Assembly (NCBI GenBank): GCA_965644295.1
Contig: CBFFRP010000078.1
Coordinates: 124,001 to 188,000, forward strand
From: Paraphysomonas bandaiensis
Lineage: Eukaryota > Protista > Chrysophyceae
Direction: 5' to 3'
Length of the DNA stretch: 64,000 nucleotides
Below, piece after piece: positions 1-47,643 of the stretch. The notes under the pieces were generated by a model, which was given only the letters and a program-made list of their open reading frames with translations, was not told where the DNA came from and did not search any database. Position 1 is the first letter of the stretch, and each line of letters opens with the position of its first letter. A program made the translations under genes and the position numbers.

Positions 1-171
1 ATTTTTCTTATTTTTATTCATTGCAATATTTAATCATTAGCTATTGAGTAACGCTTTGTACTAATGGTATACATGGTCATGATGATTAAATATTTCAGAT
101 CTATTAACAGCCATATTACAAACTCTAACTGCAAATAGTTTGCAGAAAGTAATAGTACATCTATCGACAGT

Positions 172-702
172 TCACAAACTATTTTCAGGGGCATCCAATA
201 CATATTCAGATTCTATAATATCAACACAATTAGAATCAGATGCGGTATTTAAACTACAGAAATTGTCAGAACTCAATTCTTCGGTGGGTTTCAATATTTC
301 ATAACGGGGCGAGGGTGACACTATTTTTTCTTGGAGATTGTTTGGCCGCGCCGAAAACATATTACCAAAGGAAAGCATCAAAAGGGAAAGTAGTCGCAGT
401 CTCTTCGCTACGATATACAGCACTACAGCAAAGAAAAAAACTAATGAGCCCAACAGACTGTATTTTTCCCATATTTCTGCGTTCTTTAAAGAACTGAGAC
501 GCTTTTTACTAGATCCAAGTGCCCCTTTAAGATGATATGAATGTTCCTGTAATGTATCCTTAATAAGATCTCCATCTCTCGTTAGATGATTGACTGCATT
601 TTCTGATCCATGTAATGTCCGCTCAATCACAACTCTTGTGCGTTGAAGGGATTCAGTAACTCCTCTGGCACTCTTAACAGTGTTATTCGATGTAGATGGC
701 AT
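172..702 (-). CDS. SEC20: Sec20/BNIP1-family SNARE (short form)
   Basis: VTESLQRTR...L..SKKRLSSL...FFFAVVLYIVAKR matches the Sec20 SNARE helix followed by a TM segment; single ORF of 176 aa. Confidence 0.7.
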   Translation of the reverse strand: MPSTSNNTVKSARGVTESLQRTRVVIERTLHGSENAVNHLTRDGDLIKDTLQEHSYHLKGALGSSKKRLSSLKNAEIWEKYSLLGSLVFFFAVVLYIVAKRLRLLSLLMLSFGNMFSARPNNLQEKIVSPSPRYEILKPTEELSSDNFCSLNTASDSNCVDIIESEYVLDAPENSL

Positions 703-1100
703 GGAGTAGGGAATATATACGATTCAATCCAACAATTGTAGAGTGAATTAAATATATCTTCACATGTGCCTGATGTGTGAGGAGGGTATATACTAAAGTA
801 TTATATACAGTAGTCCACATCATACAGACTCAGCAGTGTAGGCATATATACGTCATATTCCAATTGTAGAGCTGGAAAAGAGGTACTCTGCACTGTATAC
901 CAACCTACTGTACTTTGTTGTATGGTGTAACTATATACTTCTGCATTCTAATCGTTGATTGGTCAATTTCATTTTGGTGCAGTGTCTCTTCAAGATATCT
1001 CTCGCCTGTTCAAGATTTCATAGTTACGGTGGCAGTTGCAACGCTTTGCAACATCTTTTGTAATCAAATAGACACCAAAATCACAAACATCAAAGTGATC

Positions 1101-3233
1101 ATGATGAAAACTGCGTTAATTACAGCATTGGCTGCCAATGCCGCCAGCATTGTTAATGCCGAGTGTGCAAATGCATGCAATGGGCACGGAAGTTGCACCA
1201 GTTATGATATGTGCGATTGCAACCGAAACTGGCAGGCTAATGACTGTTCAGAGCGTGTGTGCCAGTTTGGTCTTGCACACGTGGATACCCCAAAGGGAGA
1301 TTTGAACCACGATAATGTCATTGAAGGCCCTGACAATATCATTGTTGAGAATGCCTTTAAGTATCCTTTTGGAACCACTGAGCAGTTTCCCCGCATGCAG
1401 GATTCGGATCTTGCTGACCTCGAGAATTCAGCCCACTACTACATGGAATGCTCTAATAAGGGAACCTGTAACAGAGAAACTGGTACTTGTGAGTGCTTTC
1501 CTGGATATGACGGTGCAGCATGTCAGCGTGCTTCTTGCCCTGGATACCCAGAGTCCTGCTCTGGGCATGGTGTTTGCAAAACCATTCGCCAGTTGGCCAA
1601 TGCCGATTACGGCAATATTTACGAGCTTTGGGACAGAGATGTAACAATGGGGTGTGAGTGTGACAAGGGATTTTATGGTCCTGACTGCTCTTTGAGAGAG
1701 TGCAAGTATGAGATCGACCCTCTATACTATGATGATACCGCTACTATTAAATATTCTGTCTTCGACTTCGCCATCCTCACCACTGGAAGTCTGCAGACAG
1801 ATTTCACCAATGGTATGTCTGATTCTAGCACAGCTTACTGGGCGATCAAGTTCTATGATATGCACGGTGAGGACTGGACTACTAGACCTATTCCTGAGGG
1901 AGCTCAGTGCGCCGAGGTCTTGGATGCCCTGGCTGACCTTCCCAATGATGTTATCCCTAGAATGGATTCCACATGGTGCACGAGAACTGCCAGGGACAAT
2001 GCTGAGAGTCTTGATGGTGGTTTCGATAGCACTGATGCACTTACCTATGATACTGCTCGTCCTATTGCATACCCTCTTGGATTCTGGCTTGCCGATGGTG
2101 TCACACGCAACACAACCTCATTTGATAACGTAGAGGCTCCTGAATTCTCTGGTTACATATACCGCATTCACTTCAACAACAACCCAGGAAAACTTAGACA
2201 ACCTGAGATCGATATCTATCTTGATGGTAAGCGCCCCACTCTCAGCTCAGATCCCGAAAACACTGACGAGATCGTCACGCGTGTGTGGACCGACGGACAG
2301 CAGGGTGAGAACATTGATTACTTCGGCGACCACTGCGATGGTGTCACTGTTACACTGGACTTTACTGATGGAACTGGAACTGTCCTCGCTGGTCTTGATG
2401 CTACTGAGACCGCACTTCTTAAGGCATGTCTCGGAACCTCTGATTTTGATCCCAATAACAATGTTGAGATCTACGACTGGGACCATGGTAGCGAGATGTA
2501 TCCCCATCTTATCAAGCTTGTCCTTTCAGTGACCAGCTCAGCTGATGGAGGGTACTACGCTGCATTATACTACGACGGAACTAACTTTAACCTCCTTAAT
2601 CCCATCCGCGGTCCTGATCAGGACGAGAGTGACATGTTCGAGGTGTACACGACTAAGGGTGTGCTCGCTCGTACGTCCAACAAGACCGAGGCACACTTTG
2701 GATTCGCTTCTCAGGAAATTGTCATGACTAACACAACCTGGGAGTACCATGAGGGTAGGGTATCTTTCGATGGTGATGTTTCTTGCGAGGTCAATGATAA
2801 CAACCGTTACAAGCTTGAGTACATTGACCACTGCTTGAACAAGTCTGATATCATTACTTTCCTTACTTTTGACGATCTCTCCCGTAACCCTCCTCACATT
2901 AACCTTTACACTGTTGAGAAGATCTGGACGAAGCAGTACCAGGCCAACTCTACTGATACCTTCCCCACTCTTGCCAAGGACGTCCATCAACGATTTGGTA
3001 CTCACGTCATCGAGACCGACCTCTCAACTAACTGGGCTGCTGATAATGCCATCGAGCCAAACAACCCTCTGAACTTTAACATCTACAAGTTCTTCCCTGA
3101 TGAGACAAGCAACTACGAGTATGTCGCACAGTGCTCCAATAGAGGAATCTGCAACACTGATGAGGGATTGTGTGAGTGCTTTTCTGGCTACACTGGTGAT
3201 GCTTGCCAGACTCAAGCCAGCCTAGCTGTGTAA
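1101..3233 (+). CDS. Tubular mastigoneme protein (Ocm1/Sig1 family, EGF-like repeats)
   Basis: Signal peptide MMKTALITALAANAASIVNA; then ECANACNGHG, CQFGLAHVDTPKGDL, AHYYMECSNKGTCNRETGTCECFPGYDGAACQRASCP; C-terminal YEYVAQCSNRGICN..CECFSGYTGDAC. First in-frame ATG is at 1101; intronless. Confidence 0.9.
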   Translation: MMKTALITALAANAASIVNAECANACNGHGSCTSYDMCDCNRNWQANDCSERVCQFGLAHVDTPKGDLNHDNVIEGPDNIIVENAFKYPFGTTEQFPRMQDSDLADLENSAHYYMECSNKGTCNRETGTCECFPGYDGAACQRASCPGYPESCSGHGVCKTIRQLANADYGNIYELWDRDVTMGCECDKGFYGPDCSLRECKYEIDPLYYDDTATIKYSVFDFAILTTGSLQTDFTNGMSDSSTAYWAIKFYDMHGEDWTTRPIPEGAQCAEVLDALADLPNDVIPRMDSTWCTRTARDNAESLDGGFDSTDALTYDTARPIAYPLGFWLADGVTRNTTSFDNVEAPEFSGYIYRIHFNNNPGKLRQPEIDIYLDGKRPTLSSDPENTDEIVTRVWTDGQQGENIDYFGDHCDGVTVTLDFTDGTGTVLAGLDATETALLKACLGTSDFDPNNNVEIYDWDHGSEMYPHLIKLVLSVTSSADGGYYAALYYDGTNFNLLNPIRGPDQDESDMFEVYTTKGVLARTSNKTEAHFGFASQEIVMTNTTWEYHEGRVSFDGDVSCEVNDNNRYKLEYIDHCLNKSDIITFLTFDDLSRNPPHINLYTVEKIWTKQYQANSTDTFPTLAKDVHQRFGTHVIETDLSTNWAADNAIEPNNPLNFNIYKFFPDETSNYEYVAQCSNRGICNTDEGLCECFSGYTGDACQTQASLAV

Positions 3234-35593: not shown

Positions 35594-36040
35594 CTACTCT
35601 CTCAATGGCCCACGAATTCTCCTCGCTAGTTGTATATCTTTTGGCATAACAGTGACTCGTTTAGCATGGATGGTGCACAAATTCGCGTCCTCGAATAAGC
35701 CTACAAGATGTGATTCTGCTGCTTCTTGTAATGCAATCAATGCATCCGCCTGCCATCTGTAAATCTATTAAAAAATCCAATATAAAGTACAGTATACAAA
35801 CCTATATTCCTTTCTTGAAAAATATGTTTGAATTTCTCTAACTAGCCTTGCAAAAGGCAATTTCCTAATTAATAGATCTGTGTTTCTCTGATAAAATCTT
35901 ATTTCTCTTAAAGCCTTTTGACCCGGCCTAAATCTCCTTCGTTGTTCACTTGCTACTGAACGATGTGCTGCAGCAGGAGACTTACGAGGGGTGGAGCTCT
36001 TTCTTCCTCCGATCATTCTATCGGCTTTACTTCTTGCCAT
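35594..36040 (-). CDS. CENH3: Centromeric histone H3 variant (CENH3/CENP-A); 2 exons
   Basis: Histone H3 fold with a divergent tail and CenH3-type changes: LPFARL (Q68 absent), loop 1 one residue longer ([12 protein letters not shown]), WQ in place of FQ, FEDANL (T107 absent); ends [10 protein letters not shown]. Confidence 0.88.
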
Positions 36041-39097: not shown

Positions 39098-40133
39098 CTA
39101 TACTTCAGTATTTTCGGAAGTTTCCACAGCAACTCCATCCGTATCCCCTTCCAATTTACCATCAACTGCCTCAGAAACCTTCCGCTTATTTGACTTCATC
39201 GCATATGTTTCATCGGAGCTCATCTTTTTAAGGTACCCTTCGGCATACAGTTGACTGACCTTACATTGCACCCCGAGGTAGTTCACAATGTTCCCCTCGG
39301 CATCCCGTAAAGCACCTATAAAGACTTGGTTCCAAAAAGGTGTACCATCAGCACGATAATTGAGGAGCACAGTACTGGTGTCTTCTCCACTTAGGATACC
39401 TGCGCGAAGGATATCTACACCCCTCTTATCTGTCTGAGGGCCCTGCATGAAGCGGCAATTCCTCCCCAAAACCTCATCAAGGGAATATCCCGTCAAGGCA
39501 AGAAATCCATGACTCGCGTAAACCACAGGATTATCGTCTAACTTCGGGTCAGTGATTACAAAATTCTGCTGAGCTGTCTGAAGCGCTTTCACGAGGGAGT
39601 AGTCCGGTGCAACCTGTTTGTTTATTGCGTCACCATTACCATCAACAGCGCCTCCACCAGGGGCATTTACAGAGTCACCACTTGATTGAAATGGCAGAAA
39701 CTCTGCCCCTAAATGAGTTCGAATGGCCTCTTTCAGTTTCTCGTTTTCGTCCTGTAATAACGATACACTCTTTTGAAGTGATTCCTGAACAAATTTTTTG
39801 CGTATTCTCGACCTTTTCGCGTGCTCCCTATTCCGTTCTCTATTACAAGAAAATAAAAATGAATATAAATAATATTAATTCTATTTTAATATCTATATAC
39901 CTTCTCTCCATTTTATCAGAATCAGTCGAATTACTTGTACTAGTTGGTTTTGTTTCTTTTGTTTTCATCTCACCATTTGATTCGCACTCAATACTGCCAT
40001 ATGATTGAAATGTATCAATATCTTGTAAATCAGATTGCATAAGATCATTAAATAAATCATCCAGAGTAAATTCTTTATCTTTATCATCATATGATACTCC
40101 AAATACAGGAGCAGATGTATAACCACTCTGCAT
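39098..40133 (-). CDS. AUREO1: Aureochrome (bZIP-LOV blue-light receptor transcription factor); 2 exons
   Basis: Spliced bZIP ERR|ERNREHAKRSRIRKKFVQESLQKSV..LQDENEKLK followed by LOV DYSLVKALQTAQQNFVITDP...GRNCRFMQGP with the photoactive Cys intact. Confidence 0.95.
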
Positions 40134-40548: not shown

Positions 40549-40737
40549 CTGTACGTTTCTGTCAACTTTTATCCACGCACTCGTTTTTCCACAAAAACAC
40601 TCTCTCCACACCCATTCCGACGACTCTCCAATTCTGACACGAGCATTCCACAAGCATTCCATTCTACCCCTGGTGGACTCAAATTATACCCACAACTCCA
40701 TTACACTGTACAATATGTAACAATATGGCTGCAGCTC
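40549..40737 (+). repeat. 189-bp terminal inverted repeat (4 copies: 40549-40737, 43732-43920, 44018-44206, 47200-47388)
   Basis: Identical from CTGTACGTTTC through ATGGCTGCAGCTC in all four copies, as read by eye. Confidence 0.95.
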
Positions 40738-41681
40738 CTGTATTGGATCTTTCTGAAGACTTCATTTATGATCATCCGGTGTTTCGAATTGATCACAGAC
40801 TTGTTGAGCATGAGCCTGTTGAGGCAGAGGAAGGAATATCACAACATGGTTTGTCTAGGCATCAATATACAGTATTGTTTTGGTACAAATGTTGTTTTAA
40901 GGATACCACTCTGCTTGAATGCGCAGAGTTTCTGAGAATTGTTTGCAACGTGACTGTGAGCCGATCCACAGTGTGCAGAGCACTCCTCCGACTTGGTTTC
41001 AAGAAAAAGCATATGAAGTACATCGCCAAGTATCTTGACGAGAATGATAGAGTGGCATTTTGGGTCAATCCGCCTGATCATTCACTGCGACCGGGTGTGC
41101 TTGGGGTTTATTATCGGGACATTGTGGACTTAGACGAAAGCGGCTTTTACGTCTCCAATTCACGGCGTGTCTGTGGTCACTCTCTTGGGAGCACCTCAAG
41201 CAGTTCTATTGGAAACAAAGCCCGCATGCTGCCCCACTACTCATTGCTAGTTGCTATCGACGCTCGCAAAGGTGTGATCAACAACATATTTTATCCACAT
41301 GGCACAACTTCGGAGGTATTCTACCACTTTGTTGTGTACCTGTTAATTCCCAGTCTTGAGGGTACTGGGAGACGTGTCATTACAATGGATCGCTTGAGTG
41401 CTCATTTTGGAGTTGTGGTCAAAGCTCTAACGGATGCTGGACATTATGTTGTCTTTCGTCCTGCTTCGTCCCCTACCTTTGCACCAGTGGAATGGGTATT
41501 CAGTTACGTGGACAAGTTTCTTCAAGAGCATAGTCCACAAGTCACGCCCAATTCATTAAAGTTTTGGTTAAGGACGGCTTTGGATACAATTAGTAGGTTT
41601 GACGTCAAACAGTATATGGCAGCTGCACACTTTTATGTCCCGACGTATCCGTACACACCTTACCGCGGTGAACAATCATAG
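40725..41681 (+). CDS. IS630/Tc1-like DD33E transposase, copy A
   Basis: HTH TLLECAEFL...VSRSTVCRALLRLGFKKK; catalytic IVDLDESGF, ITMDRLSAH, SSPTFAPVEWVF; 33 residues between the second D and E. Confidence 0.92.
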   Translation: MAAAPVLDLSEDFIYDHPVFRIDHRLVEHEPVEAEEGISQHGLSRHQYTVLFWYKCCFKDTTLLECAEFLRIVCNVTVSRSTVCRALLRLGFKKKHMKYIAKYLDENDRVAFWVNPPDHSLRPGVLGVYYRDIVDLDESGFYVSNSRRVCGHSLGSTSSSSIGNKARMLPHYSLLVAIDARKGVINNIFYPHGTTSEVFYHFVVYLLIPSLEGTGRRVITMDRLSAHFGVVVKALTDAGHYVVFRPASSPTFAPVEWVFSYVDKFLQEHSPQVTPNSLKFWLRTALDTISRFDVKQYMAAAHFYVPTYPYTPYRGEQS

Positions 41682-42202
41682 GGGTGCTATGTGGTTGTAG
41701 TGCACGTTGTGACTGCGCTGCACTTAGTATTTATTAATCTGGTTATTTATTCTTAACTATTCTAAATTATTATTCTTAAGTAATTTGGAACAGTATATTG
41801 CAATACCTTGCAAATGATATTAATCTGTTTAATATATTATTAGCTATATGTCGGTGGAATGCTTTTCACTTTTCACATTGTAATTACTAGTTTCATACGA
41901 AATTGAAAGCGCAGTGCTCACGGCAATAGTGATGAGAGTAAGCTTGTGTAATTTGGGCTCAAAATGAGTCCATTAAAAATTTGGGTGAATGTGTGATTAT
42001 TACACAGTTCTAGTGATGACATAATATGATTAATAATTAATACATTAATTAACAATAATAAAATTTATATAAAACTTCTTGACAACGATTGAATAATAAT
42101 AACAGCGAAAAGCAATAATAATAAAAGGCTATATCTGGAATCAGCAGGCTATAATAAGAAAACAAACTAATTTATAAAAAGAAAAGACACAATGCTAAGG
42201 GT

Positions 42203-43744
42203 CTACTCCGGGAAAGTGCCATCTGAAGTGGGCTCCAGCTTCAGCTCATTCAAATCATGAACTAAATCAGGCCTCAACACAACCACCACCGCATTGACAG
42301 CAGCCACACAACCTTTCAAGTCCATCTCTGTATCGTGACTGTACGCGTTATTTGGCGACAGTGGAGCCGACACTGGATGTAGCAGGGAAAAAATTCTGTC
42401 CGCAAGCCGCTTGTTTTCTGAGACACTGATGGTGAGGAGCCGTGCGATTGTTTCTTTGCAGTCCTCATATAACACCTGGGCCTCTCTTCCAATATTTAAA
42501 GCAACAAAGTGAGCGTACAACTGTTGTCTGAAGAATGTCAGGAAAGTCACAGTCTCCTCACGGGCCTGGAGTTCAACTGCACTCAGCTCAGGGGCACTGG
42601 TTGGAGCACAACCGTTCTCCTCCATGCGGCGTCTTTTGGCAGCCAACCCATCGTCTGCATTAGGAATGTCTGTAACTCCCTCCACATATTCCGGTGGAGC
42701 CGAAGCAACCGCGCGCACAGATGCGTCGTCCAGTGCCTTTCGTTGCTCCTCTGTTAATAGGCGCACAGCATTATGTCGGGAAATGGTTGCAATCAAAGAC
42801 TTAATCGGAACATCCATATCAATGGCCGCCTCAAGATTCTTCATGGTTTCAACTAATCGGTAGGTGGCATGGGGATGAAGTAAAAAAGATCGTTGGTCCG
42901 TCTGGTCTTTCTGGTGTTCTTCCCGAACTCTGGACATAACTGTATCTGATGCCCCGCAACGCTCAAGAAATCCAGGTGCTTGGCGCTCCAACTCTGACAG
43001 CACAATGTATCCATCCGGCTCTTGCAGGAGTTTATTCAAATGAATTAGAGCAAAGTTATTGACCTCAAAAGACGCTCTAGTGCTGTTCATTCGAGTCTGC
43101 TCGGCCAGTGCATTCATGTAAATCTGTCGCCGCTTCTTATCGTACTCCGAGATGACTTCAGCATGCTGTGGATACTTAGGGTAGGGACAATCCGACCACG
43201 GATCAGGCTGAATCCTAAACTCAACACTATGGGGCGCCACATTGCATACGGGACAGCTACACTTCACTTTAACAATTAAATCACAACCCTTGCACCTGCC
43301 CATTGGAGGTATGAATGTGGTGGCGTTGCTGATGGGACAGTCGTGCCTTAATGCTGCTTGCAACTCCGCACTCGACATGCACACAGGACAACGAGTGCAC
43401 TCCAAGCGATCATCTTTACTTGCTTTTTTCATCTCTGCGGCTTTGCAGTAGAACACGTCGTCCCTTTCTTCGTCATTTGTTATTGGTAGCCGTCGAACAT
43501 CTTTCTTTGCGCGCACGTGTTTCAGGAATCCCTTCCAGATGGTATAATGATGAAGACACCCAGGACACCTCACACCATCTTGTGGTGGATTTCTTGTGTT
43601 CGATTTGAACCTTTCCTGCCCACCGTGAAGTACGGTGTGTTCTGGAACAACATCGCGGAGTGATGGGAGGTGAGCGGCCACCAAATTCTCGGAAGGAGCA
43701 AACACGAATATATCGCCACCATCGTGGTGATGAGCTGCAGCCAT
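42203..43744 (-). CDS. Transposon-borne 513-aa Cys/His-rich protein of unknown function (ORF2), copy A intact
   Basis: Uninterrupted ORF starting inside the right TIR; CPGC-x12-H, CTRCPVC, CKGC-x7-CSCPVC; NLS-like AAKRRRM. Confidence 0.85.
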   Translation of the reverse strand: MAAAHHHDGGDIFVFAPSENLVAAHLPSLRDVVPEHTVLHGGQERFKSNTRNPPQDGVRCPGCLHHYTIWKGFLKHVRAKKDVRRLPITNDEERDDVFYCKAAEMKKASKDDRLECTRCPVCMSSAELQAALRHDCPISNATTFIPPMGRCKGCDLIVKVKCSCPVCNVAPHSVEFRIQPDPWSDCPYPKYPQHAEVISEYDKKRRQIYMNALAEQTRMNSTRASFEVNNFALIHLNKLLQEPDGYIVLSELERQAPGFLERCGASDTVMSRVREEHQKDQTDQRSFLLHPHATYRLVETMKNLEAAIDMDVPIKSLIATISRHNAVRLLTEEQRKALDDASVRAVASAPPEYVEGVTDIPNADDGLAAKRRRMEENGCAPTSAPELSAVELQAREETVTFLTFFRQQLYAHFVALNIGREAQVLYEDCKETIARLLTISVSENKRLADRIFSLLHPVSAPLSPNNAYSHDTEMDLKGCVAAVNAVVVVLRPDLVHDLNELKLEPTSDGTFPE

Positions 43745-44193
43745 ATTGTTACATATTGTACAGTGTAATGGAGTTGTGGGTATAATTTGAGTCCACCAGG
43801 GGTAGAATGGAATGCTTGTGGAATGCTCGTGTCAGAATTGGAGAGTCGTCGGAATGGGTGTGGAGAGAGTGTTTTTGTGGAAAAACGAGTGCGTGGATAA
43901 AAGTTGACAGAAACGTACAGTACTACTAGTAGTATCTAAAATACCTGGACACAAAATATAAATATGTACTTTTTCAAACTAGCGTCTTTTATTTCTGGGA
44001 CATTTATCTACTGTATACTGTACGTTTCTGTCAACTTTTATCCACGCACTCGTTTTTCCACAAAAACACTCTCTCCACACCCATTCCGACGACTCTCCAA
44101 TTCTGACACGAGCATTCCACAAGCATTCCATTCTACCCCTGGTGGACTCAAATTATACCCACAACTCCATTACACTGTACAATATGTAACAAT

Positions 44194-45734
44194 ATGGCTG
44201 CAGCTCATCACCACGATGGTGGCGATATATTCGTGTTTGCTCCTTCCGAGAATTTGGTGGCCGCTCACCTCCCATCACTCCGCGATGTTGTTCCAGAACA
44301 CACCGTACTTCACGGTGGGCAGGAAAGGTTCAAATCGAACACAAGAAATCCACCACAAGATGGTGTGAGGTGTCCTGGGTGTCTTCATCATTATACCATC
44401 TGGAAGGGATTCCTGAAACACGTGCGCGCAAAGAAAGATGTTCGACGGCTACCAATAACAAATGACGAAGAAAGGGACGACGTGTTCTACTGCAAAGCCG
44501 CAGAGATGAAAAAAGCAAGTAAAGATGATCGCTTGGAGTGCACTCGTTGTCCTGTGTGCATGTCGAGTGCGGAGTTGCAAGCAGCATTAAGGCACGACTG
44601 TCCCATCAGCAACGCCACCACATTCATACCTCCAATGGGCAGGTGCAAGGGTTGTGATTTAATTGTTAAAGTGAAGTGTAGCTGTCCCGTATGCAATGTG
44701 GCGCCCCATAGTGTTGAGTTTAGGATTCAGCCTGATCCGTGGTCGGATTGTCCCTACCCTAAGTATCCACAGCATGCTGAAGTCATCTCGGAGTACGATA
44801 AGAAGCGGCGACAGATTTACATGAATGCACTGGCCGAGCAGACTCGAATGAACAGCACTAGAGCGTCTTTTGAGGTCAATAACTTTGCTCTAATTCATTT
44901 GAATAAACTCCTGCAAGAGCCGGATGGATACATTGTGCTGTCAGAGTTGGAGCGCCAAGCACCTGGATTTCTTGAGCGTTGCGGGGCATCAGATACAGTT
45001 ATGTCCAGAGTTCGGGAAGAACACCAGAAAGACCAGACGGACCAACGATCTTTTTACTTCATCCCCATGCCACCTACCGATTAGTTGAAACCATGAAGAA
45101 TCTTGAGGCGGCCATTGATATGGATGTTCCGATTAAGTCTTTGATTGCAACCATTTCCCGACATAATGCTGTGCGCCTATTAACAGAGGAGCAACGAAAG
45201 GCACTGGACGACGCATCTGTGCGCGCGGTTGCTTCGGCTCCACCGGAATATGTGGAGGGAGTTACAGACATTCCTAATGCAGACGATGGGTTGGCTGCCA
45301 AAAGACGCCGCATGGAGGAGAACGGTTGTGCTCCAACCAGTGCCCCTGAGCTGAGTGCAGTTGAACTCCAGGCCCGTGAGGAGACTGTGACTTTCCTGAC
45401 ATTCTTCAGACAACAGTTGTACGCTCACTTTGTTGCTTTAAATATTGGAAGAGAGGCCCAGGTGTTATATGAGGACTGCAAAGAAACAATCGCACGGCTC
45501 CTCACCATCAGTGTCTCAGAAAACAAGCGGCTTGCGGACAGAATTTTTTCCCTGCTACATCCAGTGTCGGCTCCACTGTCGCCAAATAACGCGTACAGTC
45601 ACGATACAGAGATGGACTTGAAAGGTTGTGTGGCTGCTGTCAATGCGGTGGTGGTTGTGTTGAGGCCTGATTTAGTTCATGATTTGAATGAGCTGAAGCT
45701 GGAGCCCACTTCAGATGGCACTTTCCCGGAGTAG
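44194..45734 (+). pseudogene. ORF2 copy B, frameshifted by 1 nt (real mutation or sequencing error)
   Basis: T5 at 45051-45055 versus A6 at 42882-42887 in copy A splits the protein into track ORFs 44194-45084 and 44979-45734. Confidence 0.75.
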
Positions 45735-46255
45735 ACCCTTAGCATTGTGTCTTTTCTTTTTATAAATTAGTTTGTTTTCTTATTATAGCCTGCTGATTCC
45801 AGATATAGCCTTTTATTATTATTGCTTTTCGCTGTTATTATTATTCAATCGTTGTCAAGAAGTTTTATATAAATTTTATTATTGTTAATTAATGTATTAA
45901 TTATTAATCATATTATGTCATCACTAGAACTGTGTAATAATCACACATTCACCCAAATTTTTAATGGACTCATTTTGAGCCCAAATTACACAAGCTTACT
46001 CTCATCACTATTGCCGTGAGCACTGCGCTTTCAATTTCGTATGAAACTAGTAATTACAATGTGAAAAGTGAAAAGCATTCCACCGACATATAGCTAATAA
46101 TATATTAAACAGATTAATATCATTTGCAAGGTATTGCAATATACTGTTCCAAATTACTTAAGAATAATAATTTAGAATAGTTAAGAATAAATAACCAGAT
46201 TAATAAATACTAAGTGCAGCGCAGTCACAACGTGCACTACAACCACATAGCACCC

Positions 46256-47212
46256 CTATGATTGTTCACCGCGGTAAGGTGTGTACGGATACGTCGGGAC
46301 ATAAAAGTGTGCAGCTGCCATATACTGTTTGACGTCAAACCTACTAATTGTATCCAAAGCCGTCCTTAACCAAAACTTTAATGAATTGGGCGTGACTTGT
46401 GGACTATGCTCTTGAAGAAACTTGTCCACGTAACTGAATACCCATTCCACTGGTGCAAAGGTAGGGGACGAAGCAGGACGAAAGACAACATAATGTCCAG
46501 CATCCGTTAGAGCTTTGACCACAACTCCAAAATGAGCACTCAAGCGATCCATTGTAATGACACGTCTCCCAGTACCCTCAAGACTGGGAATTAACAGGTA
46601 CACAACAAAGTGGTAGAATACCTCCGAAGTTGTGCCATGTGGATAAAATATGTTGTTGATCACACCTTTGCGAGCGTCGATAGCAACTAGCAATGAGTAG
46701 TGGGGCAGCATGCGGGCTTTGTTTCCAATAGAACTGCTTGAGGTGCTCCCAAGAGAGTGACCACAGACACGCCGTGAATTGGAGACGTAAAAGCCGCTTT
46801 CGTCTAAGTCCACAATGTCCCGATAATAAACCCCAAGCACACCCGGTCGCAGTGAATGATCAGGCGGATTGACCCAAAATGCCACTCTATCATTCTCGTC
46901 AAGATACTTGGCGATGTACTTCATATGCTTTTTCTTGAAACCAAGTCGGAGGAGTGCTCTGCACACTGTGGATCGGCTCACAGTCACGTTGCAAACAATT
47001 CTCAGAAACTCTGCGCATTCAAGCAGAGTGGTATCCTTAAAACAACATTTGTACCAAAACAATACTGTATATTGATGCCTAGACAAACCATGTTGTGATA
47101 TTCCTTCCTCTGCCTCAACAGGCTCATGCTCAACAAGTCTGTGATCAATTCGAAACACCGGATGATCATAAATGAAGTCTTCAGAAAGATCCAATACAGG
47201 AGCTGCAGCCAT
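46256..47212 (-). CDS. IS630/Tc1-like DD33E transposase, copy B
   Basis: 318-aa translation identical to 40725-41681. Confidence 0.92.
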   Translation of the reverse strand: MAAAPVLDLSEDFIYDHPVFRIDHRLVEHEPVEAEEGISQHGLSRHQYTVLFWYKCCFKDTTLLECAEFLRIVCNVTVSRSTVCRALLRLGFKKKHMKYIAKYLDENDRVAFWVNPPDHSLRPGVLGVYYRDIVDLDESGFYVSNSRRVCGHSLGSTSSSSIGNKARMLPHYSLLVAIDARKGVINNIFYPHGTTSEVFYHFVVYLLIPSLEGTGRRVITMDRLSAHFGVVVKALTDAGHYVVFRPASSPTFAPVEWVFSYVDKFLQEHSPQVTPNSLKFWLRTALDTISRFDVKQYMAAAHFYVPTYPYTPYRGEQS

Positions 47213-47643
47213 ATTGTTACATATTGTACAGTGTAATGGAGTTGTGGGTATAATTTGAGTCCACCAGGGGTAGAATGGAATGCTTGTGGAATGCTCGTGT
47301 CAGAATTGGAGAGTCGTCGGAATGGGTGTGGAGAGAGTGTTTTTGTGGAAAAACGAGTGCGTGGATAAAAGTTGACAGAAACGTACAGTATACTGTACAT
47401 TTTCATGCTATACACTGTATATAGTATCTGTATACAGTGTATATTGCATTGTGGTATACATTGTATGGGGAGGGATACATTCGGTATATACTGTACATAT
47501 ATACACTGTATATATATATGTATGTAGCAGTGTGTTTACCATGATATCACTCATATACTATTACAGAACTATTCTATCACTAGAATTGAGCCTATAGAGA
47601 CCATCTCAATCATACTTACTCACTCAATAGATTTTATATCAAT

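What the first reader, a model, noticed from the sequence alone, without database searches (positions are those of the whole stretch)
42203..43744. Unknown Zn-finger-like cargo protein (ORF2) carried by the transposon
Seen: an intact, intronless 513-aa ORF with CPGC-x12-H (C2H2-like, lacking the usual second His), CTRCPVC, CKGC...CSCPVC, a basic KRRR signal and a likely helical C-terminal half. I see no RuvC, kinase, tyrosine-recombinase, SET or protease motif. Known: accessory TE proteins include the Harbinger Myb/SANT partner, the anti-silencing VANC of VANDAL elements and the zinc-finger ORF of TBE elements. Inference: ORF2 may be a DNA-binding partner for the short-N-terminus transposase, a targeting factor or an anti-silencing factor.
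Basis: partly seen in the sequence, partly recalled or inferred. Interest (0 to 1): 0.8.

Follow-up and report, generated by a model that had tools for sequence, protein, structure and literature searches.

The report
Conserved zinc-protein partner gene of a transposon
ORF2 is a real, expressed gene for a multi-zinc protein with no known relatives. It has travelled with a Tc1/IS630-type transposase as the fixed second gene of a rare two-gene transposon family in protists, so it is probably a transposition cofactor rather than captured cargo.

Summary
Window 42203-43744 (-) is an intact, intronless 513-aa ORF inside a 3372-bp element (40549-43920). The element has 189-bp TIRs, TA target duplications and a convergent DDE_3/IS630-type transposase.

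ORF2 is not recent cargo:
- An exhaustive profile search of 1.84 billion proteins found 39 relatives, all unnamed environmental sequences.
- In seven further lineages (five environmental and one older copy in this genome found from ORF2, one found from the transposase) the ORF2-like gene lies convergent to a homologous transposase, at ORF2 identities down to 24%.
- Synonymous sites are saturated (pS 0.78-0.86) while pN is 0.40-0.46. Among about 10 near-identical genomic copies, shared changes are 5 synonymous to 2 replacement.
- PolyA metatranscriptomes hold a colinear ORF2 transcript contig, separate from the transposase contig.

Fourteen Cys/His positions are conserved across the family. AlphaFold2 (pLDDT 84.6) gives an N-terminal zinc-rich α/β domain, a helical middle, a disordered linker with KRRR, and a C-terminal helical bundle. 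Pfam, NCBIfam, PDB sequence and fold searches found nothing convincing.

Function is inferred: a nuclear cofactor co-expressed with the transposase from identical TIR promoters. The scan had already noted this element, on this same stretch only.

The parts
42203..43744 (-). ORF2 coding sequence, 513 aa, intact, no intron
   Evidence: ORF list. Colinear polyA-RNA contig on 42077-43761. 39 homologues.
43145..43717 (-). N-terminal alpha/beta zinc-rich domain (residues 10-200). The Cys/His core is residues 55-180 (43205-43582).
   Evidence: AlphaFold2 pLDDT is mostly above 90 here. Fourteen positions are conserved in 19-22 family members: C60, C63, C100, C116, C119, C122, H134, C136, C151, C154, C162, C164, C167, H172. 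Core pI is 8.8.
42671..43147 (-). Middle helical region (residues 200-358), with the conserved PDGYIVL-x-EL and HNAV-x2-LTEEQ motifs
   Evidence: Alignments and AlphaFold2 helices 200-348.
42590..42670 (-). Disordered linker (residues 359-385) holding KRRR (residues 370-373, nt 42626-42637), a candidate nuclear localisation signal
   Evidence: pLDDT is below 50. A basic K/R patch recurs at the matching place in relatives P0001, P0008, P0013 and P0015. The nuclear-import role is an inference.
42260..42589 (-). C-terminal helical bundle (residues 386-495), acidic (pI 4.9)
43732..43920 (-). Right TIR. It carries the ORF2 leader, an ATG-TAA mini-uORF, the start codon and the first 13 nt of the coding sequence (MAAA).
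   Evidence: Inverted repeat, sequence, boundaries from the copy A/B comparison.
40549..40737 (+). Left TIR, identical in reverse. It carries the leader, start codon and first 13 nt of the transposase gene (MAAA).
40725..41681 (+). ORF1, a 318-aa DDE_3 / IS630-Tc1-type transposase, convergent with ORF2
   Evidence: Pfam DDE_3 at 34.3 bits against a cut-off of 28.6. NCBIfam IS630 at E 1e-9, below that model's curated cut-off. Aligned with the transposases of the related two-gene elements.
42077..43761 (-). Extent of the ORF2 transcript contig in a polyA metatranscriptome. The intergenic stretch 41743-42076 and the outer TIR are not covered.
   Evidence: table 8, run X2 record 19. Strand is inferred from the ORF. 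The end at 43761 lies 30 nt (k-1) inside the TIR, so it is an assembly break and not a mapped transcription start.
44194..45734 (+). ORF2 of the neighbouring inverted copy B (element 44018-47388), broken by a 1-nt deletion into 296-aa and 251-aa reading frames

Best explanation
ORF2 is the second core gene of a two-gene subgroup of IS630/Tc1-type cut-and-paste transposons.

Shown:
- The element (40549-43920, TA duplications) has two convergent genes.
- Each gene starts inside one of the two identical 189-bp TIRs, so both share the same leader, mini-uORF, ATG and first four codons.
- Both genes appear as separate contigs in RNA libraries, including polyA ones.
- ORF2-like genes accompany homologous transposases in the same convergent layout across deep divergence.
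- ORF2 is under purifying selection.

Inferred:
- ORF2 is a nuclear protein (KRRR in a disordered linker).
- Its N-terminal domain holds three or more zinc ions through 14 conserved Cys/His.
- It works as a transposition cofactor made in step with the transposase. It would bind the long TIR, the transposase, or both, to assemble or direct the transposition complex. The helical C-terminal half and acidic tail would serve protein-protein contacts.

The nearest working analogies are the Myb-like partner of PIF/Harbinger and TnpA of En/Spm.
For: Element anatomy and TA duplications.

About 10 near-identical copies; 8 keep ORF2 intact.

Family size: 39 relatives among 1.84e9 representatives, 8 of them at E<1e-30.

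Convergent DDE_3 transposase beside the ORF2-like gene:
- P0013 contig.
- L038.
- L040.
- L037.
- L043/L044.
- The older C169 copy in this genome.
- The reverse test: starting from transposase homologue P0047, the contig L046 also carries the ORF2-like gene.

In L040 both genes again start at the same ATG inside the terminal inverted repeat.

The two genes diverge in parallel. Transposase / ORF2 identity is 74/48% for L038 against L037, 50/29% for the window against L046, and 36/28% for the window against L038.

Selection:
- pS 0.78-0.86 against pN 0.40-0.46.
- Shared substitutions among copies are 5 synonymous to 2 replacement in ORF2, and 5 to 0 in ORF1.

Expression: separate ORF1 and ORF2 contigs in polyA and other metatranscriptomes, with no cover of the outer TIR or the intergenic DNA. 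That argues against DNA carry-over.

Conserved Cys/His pattern. Confident model.
Against: - No direct evidence for DNA binding, zinc binding, nuclear location or contact with the transposase.
- The zinc core is only mildly basic (pI about 8-9 in most members and 5.9-7.1 in three), and the whole protein is acidic.
- No fold or sequence match to any known DNA-binding domain.
- The N-domain could not be folded and searched alone, so a known fold may have been missed.
- Tc1/mariner transposases normally need no partner.
- On C169 an ORF2-like gene is intact beside a destroyed transposase. That hints at a role that does not need its own transposase.
Confidence: 0.5

Rival explanations
1. ORF2 acts on the host rather than on the transposition reaction. 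It would be an anti-silencing or chromatin-directed factor, in the manner of VANC of VANDAL elements, protecting the element's own TIR promoters from repression.
For: The protein is element-specific and diverges faster than the transposase: 28-56% identity against 36-68%. This would fit an arms race or co-evolution with TIR sequences. Both promoters lie in the TIRs. It has an acidic C-terminal half and often an acidic/aromatic tail. An intact copy persists on C169 without a working transposase.
Against: There is no similarity to VANC or to any chromatin-reader domain. Conservation of the zinc domain down to 24% overall identity suggests a constant molecular partner rather than a fast-moving host target. 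Nothing is known here about silencing pathways in this organism.
Confidence: 0.17
2. ORF2 is a regulator of transposition. It would be a repressor or dosage controller that limits transposase activity or expression, for example by occupying the TIR promoters. It would be kept because self-restraint helps the element persist.
For: Both genes share identical TIR promoters and a mini-uORF just before the ATG, which suggests tight control of expression. The two genes are expressed together.
Against: Dedicated repressor genes are unusual in eukaryotic cut-and-paste elements. A repressor would be lost easily without harming mobility, yet ORF2 is retained in all seven further lineages found with both genes. 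Copy number (about 10 near-identical copies) shows recent activity in its presence.
Confidence: 0.13
3. The zinc domain is a protein-interaction or ubiquitin-ligase-like module (RING/PHD-type cross-brace). It would recruit or remove a host protein such as a repair, import or restriction factor.
For: Four ligand pairs lie in series: C116/C119, H134/C136, C151/C154, C164/C167. Charge is near neutral to mildly basic.
Against: The spacing does not fit canonical RING or PHD: there are 14 residues between the second and third pairs, where RING has 2-3. No RING, PHD or U-box model matches any of 39 members. There is no fold match.
Confidence: 0.08
4. ORF2 is a recently captured host gene fragment or a neutral passenger with no function for the element.
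For: No known domain and no named relatives.
Against: It is present with the transposase in seven further lineages at 24-56% identity. The genome has no host paralogue outside transposon remnants. Purifying selection is evident. The start codon is built into the TIR.
Confidence: 0.02

Closest known systems
PIF/Harbinger two-gene transposons (DDE transposase plus Myb/SANT-like DNA-binding partner)
   Same: A cut-and-paste element that keeps a second, non-catalytic gene with its transposase through deep divergence. The partner there binds subterminal DNA and brings the transposase to the nucleus (established knowledge). This is the working model I propose for ORF2.
   Different: The transposase superfamily differs (IS630/Tc1 DDE_3 here). 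ORF2 has no Myb/SANT domain. Here the genes are convergent, with start codons inside the TIRs. The partner function is not shown here.
MuDR of maize (mudrA transposase and mudrB helper)
   Same: Long TIRs of about 200 bp carry the promoters of two convergently transcribed genes, one transposase and one helper of unclear biochemistry (established knowledge). The layout is the same here.
   Different: MuDR belongs to the Mutator superfamily, with 9-bp target duplications. MURB is not known to be a zinc protein, and no similarity was detected or tested. Here even the first four codons are shared between the two genes.
Ciliate multi-ORF IS630/Tc1 elements: TBE (42kD transposase, 22kD, 57kD zinc-finger/kinase ORF), Tec, Sardine/Thon, Anchois/Tennessee
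   Same: These are DDE_3/IS630-Tc1-type transposases carried with extra ORFs of unknown function. The TBE extra ORFs are under purifying selection, and the 57kD ORF is of similar size and evolves faster than the transposase (PMC4724952, PMC3464196, PMC7325037).
   Different: Those elements have three or four ORFs in a different gene order, and TBE has telomere-like TIR ends. ORF2 has no kinase domain. Sardine ORF1 and ORF2, read by eye in the paper's supplement, lack the 14-ligand pattern. No alignment with TBE or Anchois proteins could be run. None of the 20 best ORF2 relatives comes from NCBI or UniRef records.
Classical Tc1/mariner elements (Tc1, Sleeping Beauty, Mos1)
   Same: TA target duplication, TIRs, and a DDE catalytic core with 33-34 residues between the second Asp and the Glu.
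   Different: Those are single-gene elements whose transposase carries its own full paired-type DNA-binding domain. Here a second gene is a fixed part of the element.

Membership tests
IS630/Tc1/mariner superfamily (the element that carries ORF2) | DDE transposase of the DDE_3 / IS630-Tc1 type | tested here: met
   Pfam DDE_3 at 34.3 bits against a cut-off of 28.6. NCBIfam IS630 at E 1e-9, but 38 bits against a cut-off of 100, so it is not an IS630 equivalog.
IS630/Tc1/mariner superfamily (the element that carries ORF2) | TA target-site duplication and terminal inverted repeats | tested here: met
   TA flanks both ends of copy A and copy B. The TIRs are 189 bp.
IS630/Tc1/mariner superfamily (the element that carries ORF2) | Single transposase gene | tested here: not met
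   Two convergent genes, here and in seven further lineages.
   There is no second His. H66 and H76 are not conserved across 19-22 relatives. No zf-C2H2 hit.
TBE 57kD ORF (zinc finger plus kinase) | Protein kinase domain | tested here: not met
   No Pkinase hit in ORF2 or in 38 relatives. Residues 200-493 are predicted all-helical.
TBE 57kD ORF (zinc finger plus kinase) | Sequence homology to TBE 57kD proteins | not testable with these tools
   No TBE sequence could be fetched by reference. Indirectly, the exhaustive HMMER search gave only environmental proteins among the 20 best hits that were looked up.
PIF/Harbinger Myb-like partner | Myb/SANT trihelix DNA-binding domain | tested here: not met
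   No Myb/SANT hit in any member.
RING / PHD cross-brace zinc domains | Canonical eight-ligand spacing (C3HC4 or C4HC3) and a profile match | tested here: not met
   There are 14 residues between the second and third ligand pairs. No Pfam hit. The fold of the N-domain was not searched on its own.
New ORF2 family (this report) | 14 conserved Cys/His ligands, then PDGY-IVL-x-EL and HNAV-x2-LTEEQ helices, encoded convergent to a DDE_3 transposase | tested here: met

The most novel reading that the evidence does not exclude
ORF2 founds an undescribed protein family that defines a new two-gene clade of IS630/Tc1 transposons spread among protists. In this clade, transposition would need a heteromeric machine: a DDE_3 transposase plus a multi-zinc partner, expressed in fixed ratio from mirror-image TIR promoters. 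That would make it a Tc1-type counterpart of PIF/Harbinger. The N-terminal 14-ligand zinc domain would be a new DNA- or transposase-binding fold.
Probability: 0.35. Interest if true: 0.7.

Novelty: new variant of a known kind. Interest (0 to 1): 0.6.

Why it matters
Outside ciliates, Tc1/mariner-type elements are the textbook single-gene, host-independent transposons. Here a family has kept a second gene through divergence down to 24% identity. The start codons of both genes are built into the TIRs. This suggests an obligatory partner protein and a built-in way of balancing the two products.

If ORF2 is needed for mobility, the known repertoire of transposase cofactors widens. It would also supply a new zinc-binding domain with a defined DNA or protein target, and it could matter for using such elements as tools in stramenopiles.

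The family has no Pfam model, no solved structure and no named member. This report also gives a seed alignment (A2, A3) and a confident model for annotation.

Tried and rejected
Searches that found nothing useful:
- Pfam and NCBIfam on ORF2, and Pfam on all 39 members. Only sub-threshold zinc-ribbon noise appeared.
- Word-index protein search with ORF2: none. With alignment A2: only a known fragment.
- PDB sequence-profile searches. The whole family gave a best E of 0.09, spurious. The N-domain alone gave only CxxCH heme-motif noise, E 0.02.
- Protein-atlas feature search. It gave generic zinc-finger-like neighbours for residues 10-200 and nothing for 200-513.

Other dead ends:
- The first AlphaFold2 run with two sequences was poor (pLDDT 47.6) and was replaced.
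- Exact dN/dS could not be obtained because dS is saturated in every informative pair.
- The C169 copy was searched for TIRs; none were found.

Readings rejected:
- C2H2 finger, because the His is not conserved.
- Canonical RING/PHD, because of the spacing.
- Kinase, recombinase or nuclease.
- Recent gene capture.
- A SAP-like reading of the PDGYIVL-x-EL helix pair, which remained an impression with no profile support.

Full report
**1. The observation**

Window 42203-43744 (-) is an intact ATG-to-stop ORF of 513 aa.
- CPGC at residues 60-63.
- CTRCPVC at 116-122.
- CKGC at 151-154.
- CSCPVC at 162-167.
- KRRR at 370-373.

It lies inside a transposon. Comparing the two adjacent inverted copies fixes the element at 40549-43920 (3372 bp), with 189-bp TIRs and TA on each flank.

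ORF1 (40725-41681, +, 318 aa) is a DDE_3 transposase. Pfam gives 34.3 bits, above the cut-off. NCBIfam IS630 gives E 1e-9, below its equivalog cut-off.

The two genes converge. Each TIR runs 13 nt into its gene, so both proteins begin MAAA and share one leader. That leader contains an ATG-TAA mini-uORF 4 nt before the start.

A second copy (44018-47388) lies inverted 97 bp away. It is identical except for a 1-nt deletion that splits its ORF2.

**2. Copies in the genome**

The 62.5-Mb assembly holds about 10 copies at 99% identity or more. Eight have ORF2 intact.

The variable sites among copies are:
- ORF1: 5 synonymous and 0 replacement.
- ORF2, shared between copies: 5 synonymous and 2 replacement (T268A, V343A).
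- ORF2, singletons that probably arose after insertion: 2 replacement.

About three quarters of sites are replacement sites. By my own binomial arithmetic on the counts, a 5:2 split has P of about 0.01. The numbers are small.

Older relatives also exist:
- On contig C169 there is an intact 546-aa paralogue at 37% identity. A transposase remnant lies convergent to it, reduced to four pieces in different frames and lacking its C-terminal third. No TIRs are detectable.
- Three fragments with stop codons lie on C149, C206 and C139.
- No ORF2-like gene was found outside these transposon contexts.

**3. Relatives elsewhere**

The word-index search found nothing. An exhaustive HMMER profile search of 1.84 billion cluster representatives found 39 relatives, 8 of them at E<1e-30. 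The 20 best come only from JGI, ENA or Logan environmental assemblies. They are singletons or near-singletons, named 'hypothetical protein' or not at all.

Where the contigs reach far enough, a DDE_3 gene lies convergent to the ORF2-like gene:
- P0013: a 3182-bp contig, ORF2-like at 89-1588 (+) and a 311-aa DDE_3 gene at 1895-2830 (-).
- P0016/L038: 3142 bp.
- P0011/L040: 2872 bp.
- P0020/L037: the transposase C-terminus is 41% identical to ORF1.
- P0005/L043 and L044: transposase 68% identical, ORF2 56% and 33% identical in two blocks. This copy is 5'-truncated and frameshifted.

The test also works in reverse. Starting from transposase homologue P0047 (50% identical), its contig L046 carries a convergent ORF2-like gene.

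The ends of L038 and L040 are exact inverted repeats. In L040 both genes again start at the same ATG inside that repeat. The 'start codon in the TIR' design is therefore conserved.

Contigs without a transposase (L036, L039, L041) extend at most about 780 nt beyond the ORF2-like gene, and the L042 copy is truncated.

The two genes diverge in parallel, with ORF2 the faster:

| Pair | Transposase identity | ORF2 identity |
|---|---|---|
| L038 vs L037 | 74% | 48% |
| window vs L046 | 50% | 29% |
| window vs L040 | 38% | 32% |
| window vs L038 | 36% | 28% |

**4. Selection**

By the Nei-Gojobori method, every deep pair has saturated synonymous sites (pS 0.78-0.86) but pN of only 0.40-0.46. dN/dS is therefore well below 1, although an exact value cannot be given. 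Together with section 2, this rejects neutral evolution.

**5. Expression**

The element is held in ten runs on record as RNA, from five studies. In polyA metatranscriptome X2 there are two separate contigs:
- 40708-41742, covering ORF1.
- 42077-43761, covering ORF2. It is colinear, with 3 substitutions: two synonymous and T268A, the variant that other genomic copies also carry.

None of the four runs covers the outer TIR. X1 and X2 leave 41846-42076 between the genes bare, while contigs of X11 and X13 reach to 41934. DNA carry-over is therefore unlikely, and the two genes appear as separate assembled RNA contigs.

The contig ends lie 30 nt inside the TIRs. That equals k-1 of the assembler, so they are assembly breaks and not mapped transcription starts. 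Contigs give neither strand nor expression level.

**6. The protein**

With the 39-sequence alignment, AlphaFold2 gives a mean pLDDT of 84.6. The model has four parts:
- An alpha/beta domain at residues 10-200, mostly above pLDDT 90.
- Helices from 200 to 348.
- A disordered linker at 359-385 that holds KRRR.
- A helical bundle at 389-493.

Across 19-22 members, 14 Cys/His positions are conserved: C60, C63, C100, C116, C119, C122, H134, C136, C151, C154, C162, C164, C167 and H172. H66 and H76 are not conserved. The C2H2 reading fails. The domain probably holds three or more zinc ions, which is an inference.

The zinc core is mildly basic (pI 8.8) and the C-terminal part is acidic (pI 4.9).

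No database search gave a convincing match: Pfam, NCBIfam, the PDB profile searches and all fold libraries. The only structural hits are generic helical bundles for residues 383-495.

I therefore do not claim that its fold is new.

**7. Mechanism**

Shown: ORF2 is a conserved, selected, expressed core gene of a two-gene IS630/Tc1-type family, with mirror-image TIR-embedded starts.

Inferred: ORF2 is a nuclear zinc protein that acts as a cofactor of transposition (confidence 0.5). The grounds are:
- Strict co-inheritance with the transposase.
- Parallel divergence of the two genes.
- Identical promoters, which would keep the two products in step.

Relatives with about 35 more N-terminal residues also keep ORF2.

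The rivals are a host-directed or anti-silencing factor, a repressor, and a ligase-like interaction module. Recent capture is essentially excluded. The intact C169 paralogue beside a dead transposase is a hint towards a role beyond its own element, or towards domestication.

**8. Comparison with known systems, and novelty**

By function and layout, the closest systems are the PIF/Harbinger partner protein and MuDR (convergent genes driven from TIR promoters).

By transposase type, the closest are the ciliate multi-ORF IS630/Tc1 elements: TBE, Tec, Sardine/Thon and Anchois (PMC4724952, PMC3464196, PMC7325037). ORF2 lacks the kinase domain ascribed to the TBE 57kD ORF. By eye, it does not resemble Sardine ORF1 or ORF2.

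I found no description of this family in the searchable literature. Repbase and Dfam could not be checked.

My verdict is a new variant of a known kind: a DNA transposon with an accessory gene, built on a new protein family.

**9. Other remarks**

I did not verify this.

Noticed in passing
window 40549-47388: Two copies of the element lie head-to-head as a 6.8-kb near-perfect palindrome with a 97-bp spacer. They differ by one deleted base, which frameshifts ORF2 of the second copy. This could be a nested or adjacent insertion, or an assembly effect.
   Followed up: partly
window 40711-40727 and the mirror site near 43742-43758: An ATG-TAA start-stop mini-uORF lies 4 nt upstream of the start codon of both genes, inside each TIR.
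   Followed up: no
L031 4663-6222 (+) and 6500-7482 (-), which is G000 C169:238662-241481: A 546-aa ORF2 paralogue (37% identical) is intact, while the convergent transposase beside it is reduced to four out-of-frame pieces and no TIRs remain. It may be a domesticated ORF2 or a trans-acting helper. Its expression was not tested.
   Followed up: partly
L027 1423-2466 / L032 3957-5336 (G000 C282): An intact 347-aa transposase, 90% identical to ORF1, has a longer N-terminus. It sits on a copy that matches only element positions 102-1446 (88% nt identity) and has no ORF2 or right TIR within 10 kb.
   Followed up: partly
window 41029-41500 (RNA runs X1 and X2): The RNA libraries also contain a contig of a diverged relative of the transposase. 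It matches only at its two ends and is reported as 'skips 412, same length, diverged'. A second family member is therefore present in the RNA libraries.
   Followed up: no
window 41883-41886 and 42172-42178: The intergenic spacer between the two genes is polymorphic among genomic copies and in environmental transcript contigs, with a 12-nt insertion and a 7-nt deletion. The coding regions are nearly invariant.
   Followed up: partly
window 39098-39592 (-): A 164-aa ORF with a LOV/PAS-type motif (NCRFMQGPQTD) lies just upstream of the element. It looks like a light-sensor-type domain gene in a reportedly colourless chrysophyte.
   Followed up: no
window 35768-36040 (-): An ORF with a histone H3-like N-terminal tail and alpha-N region ends abruptly. 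It is probably one exon of an H3 variant or a CENP-A-like gene.
   Followed up: no
L044 76-403 (-) and 670-1227 (+): In an environmental relative, the truncated two-gene element sits next to a histone deacetylase gene fragment and a second, more distant transposase fragment. This suggests nested or clustered insertions.
   Followed up: no
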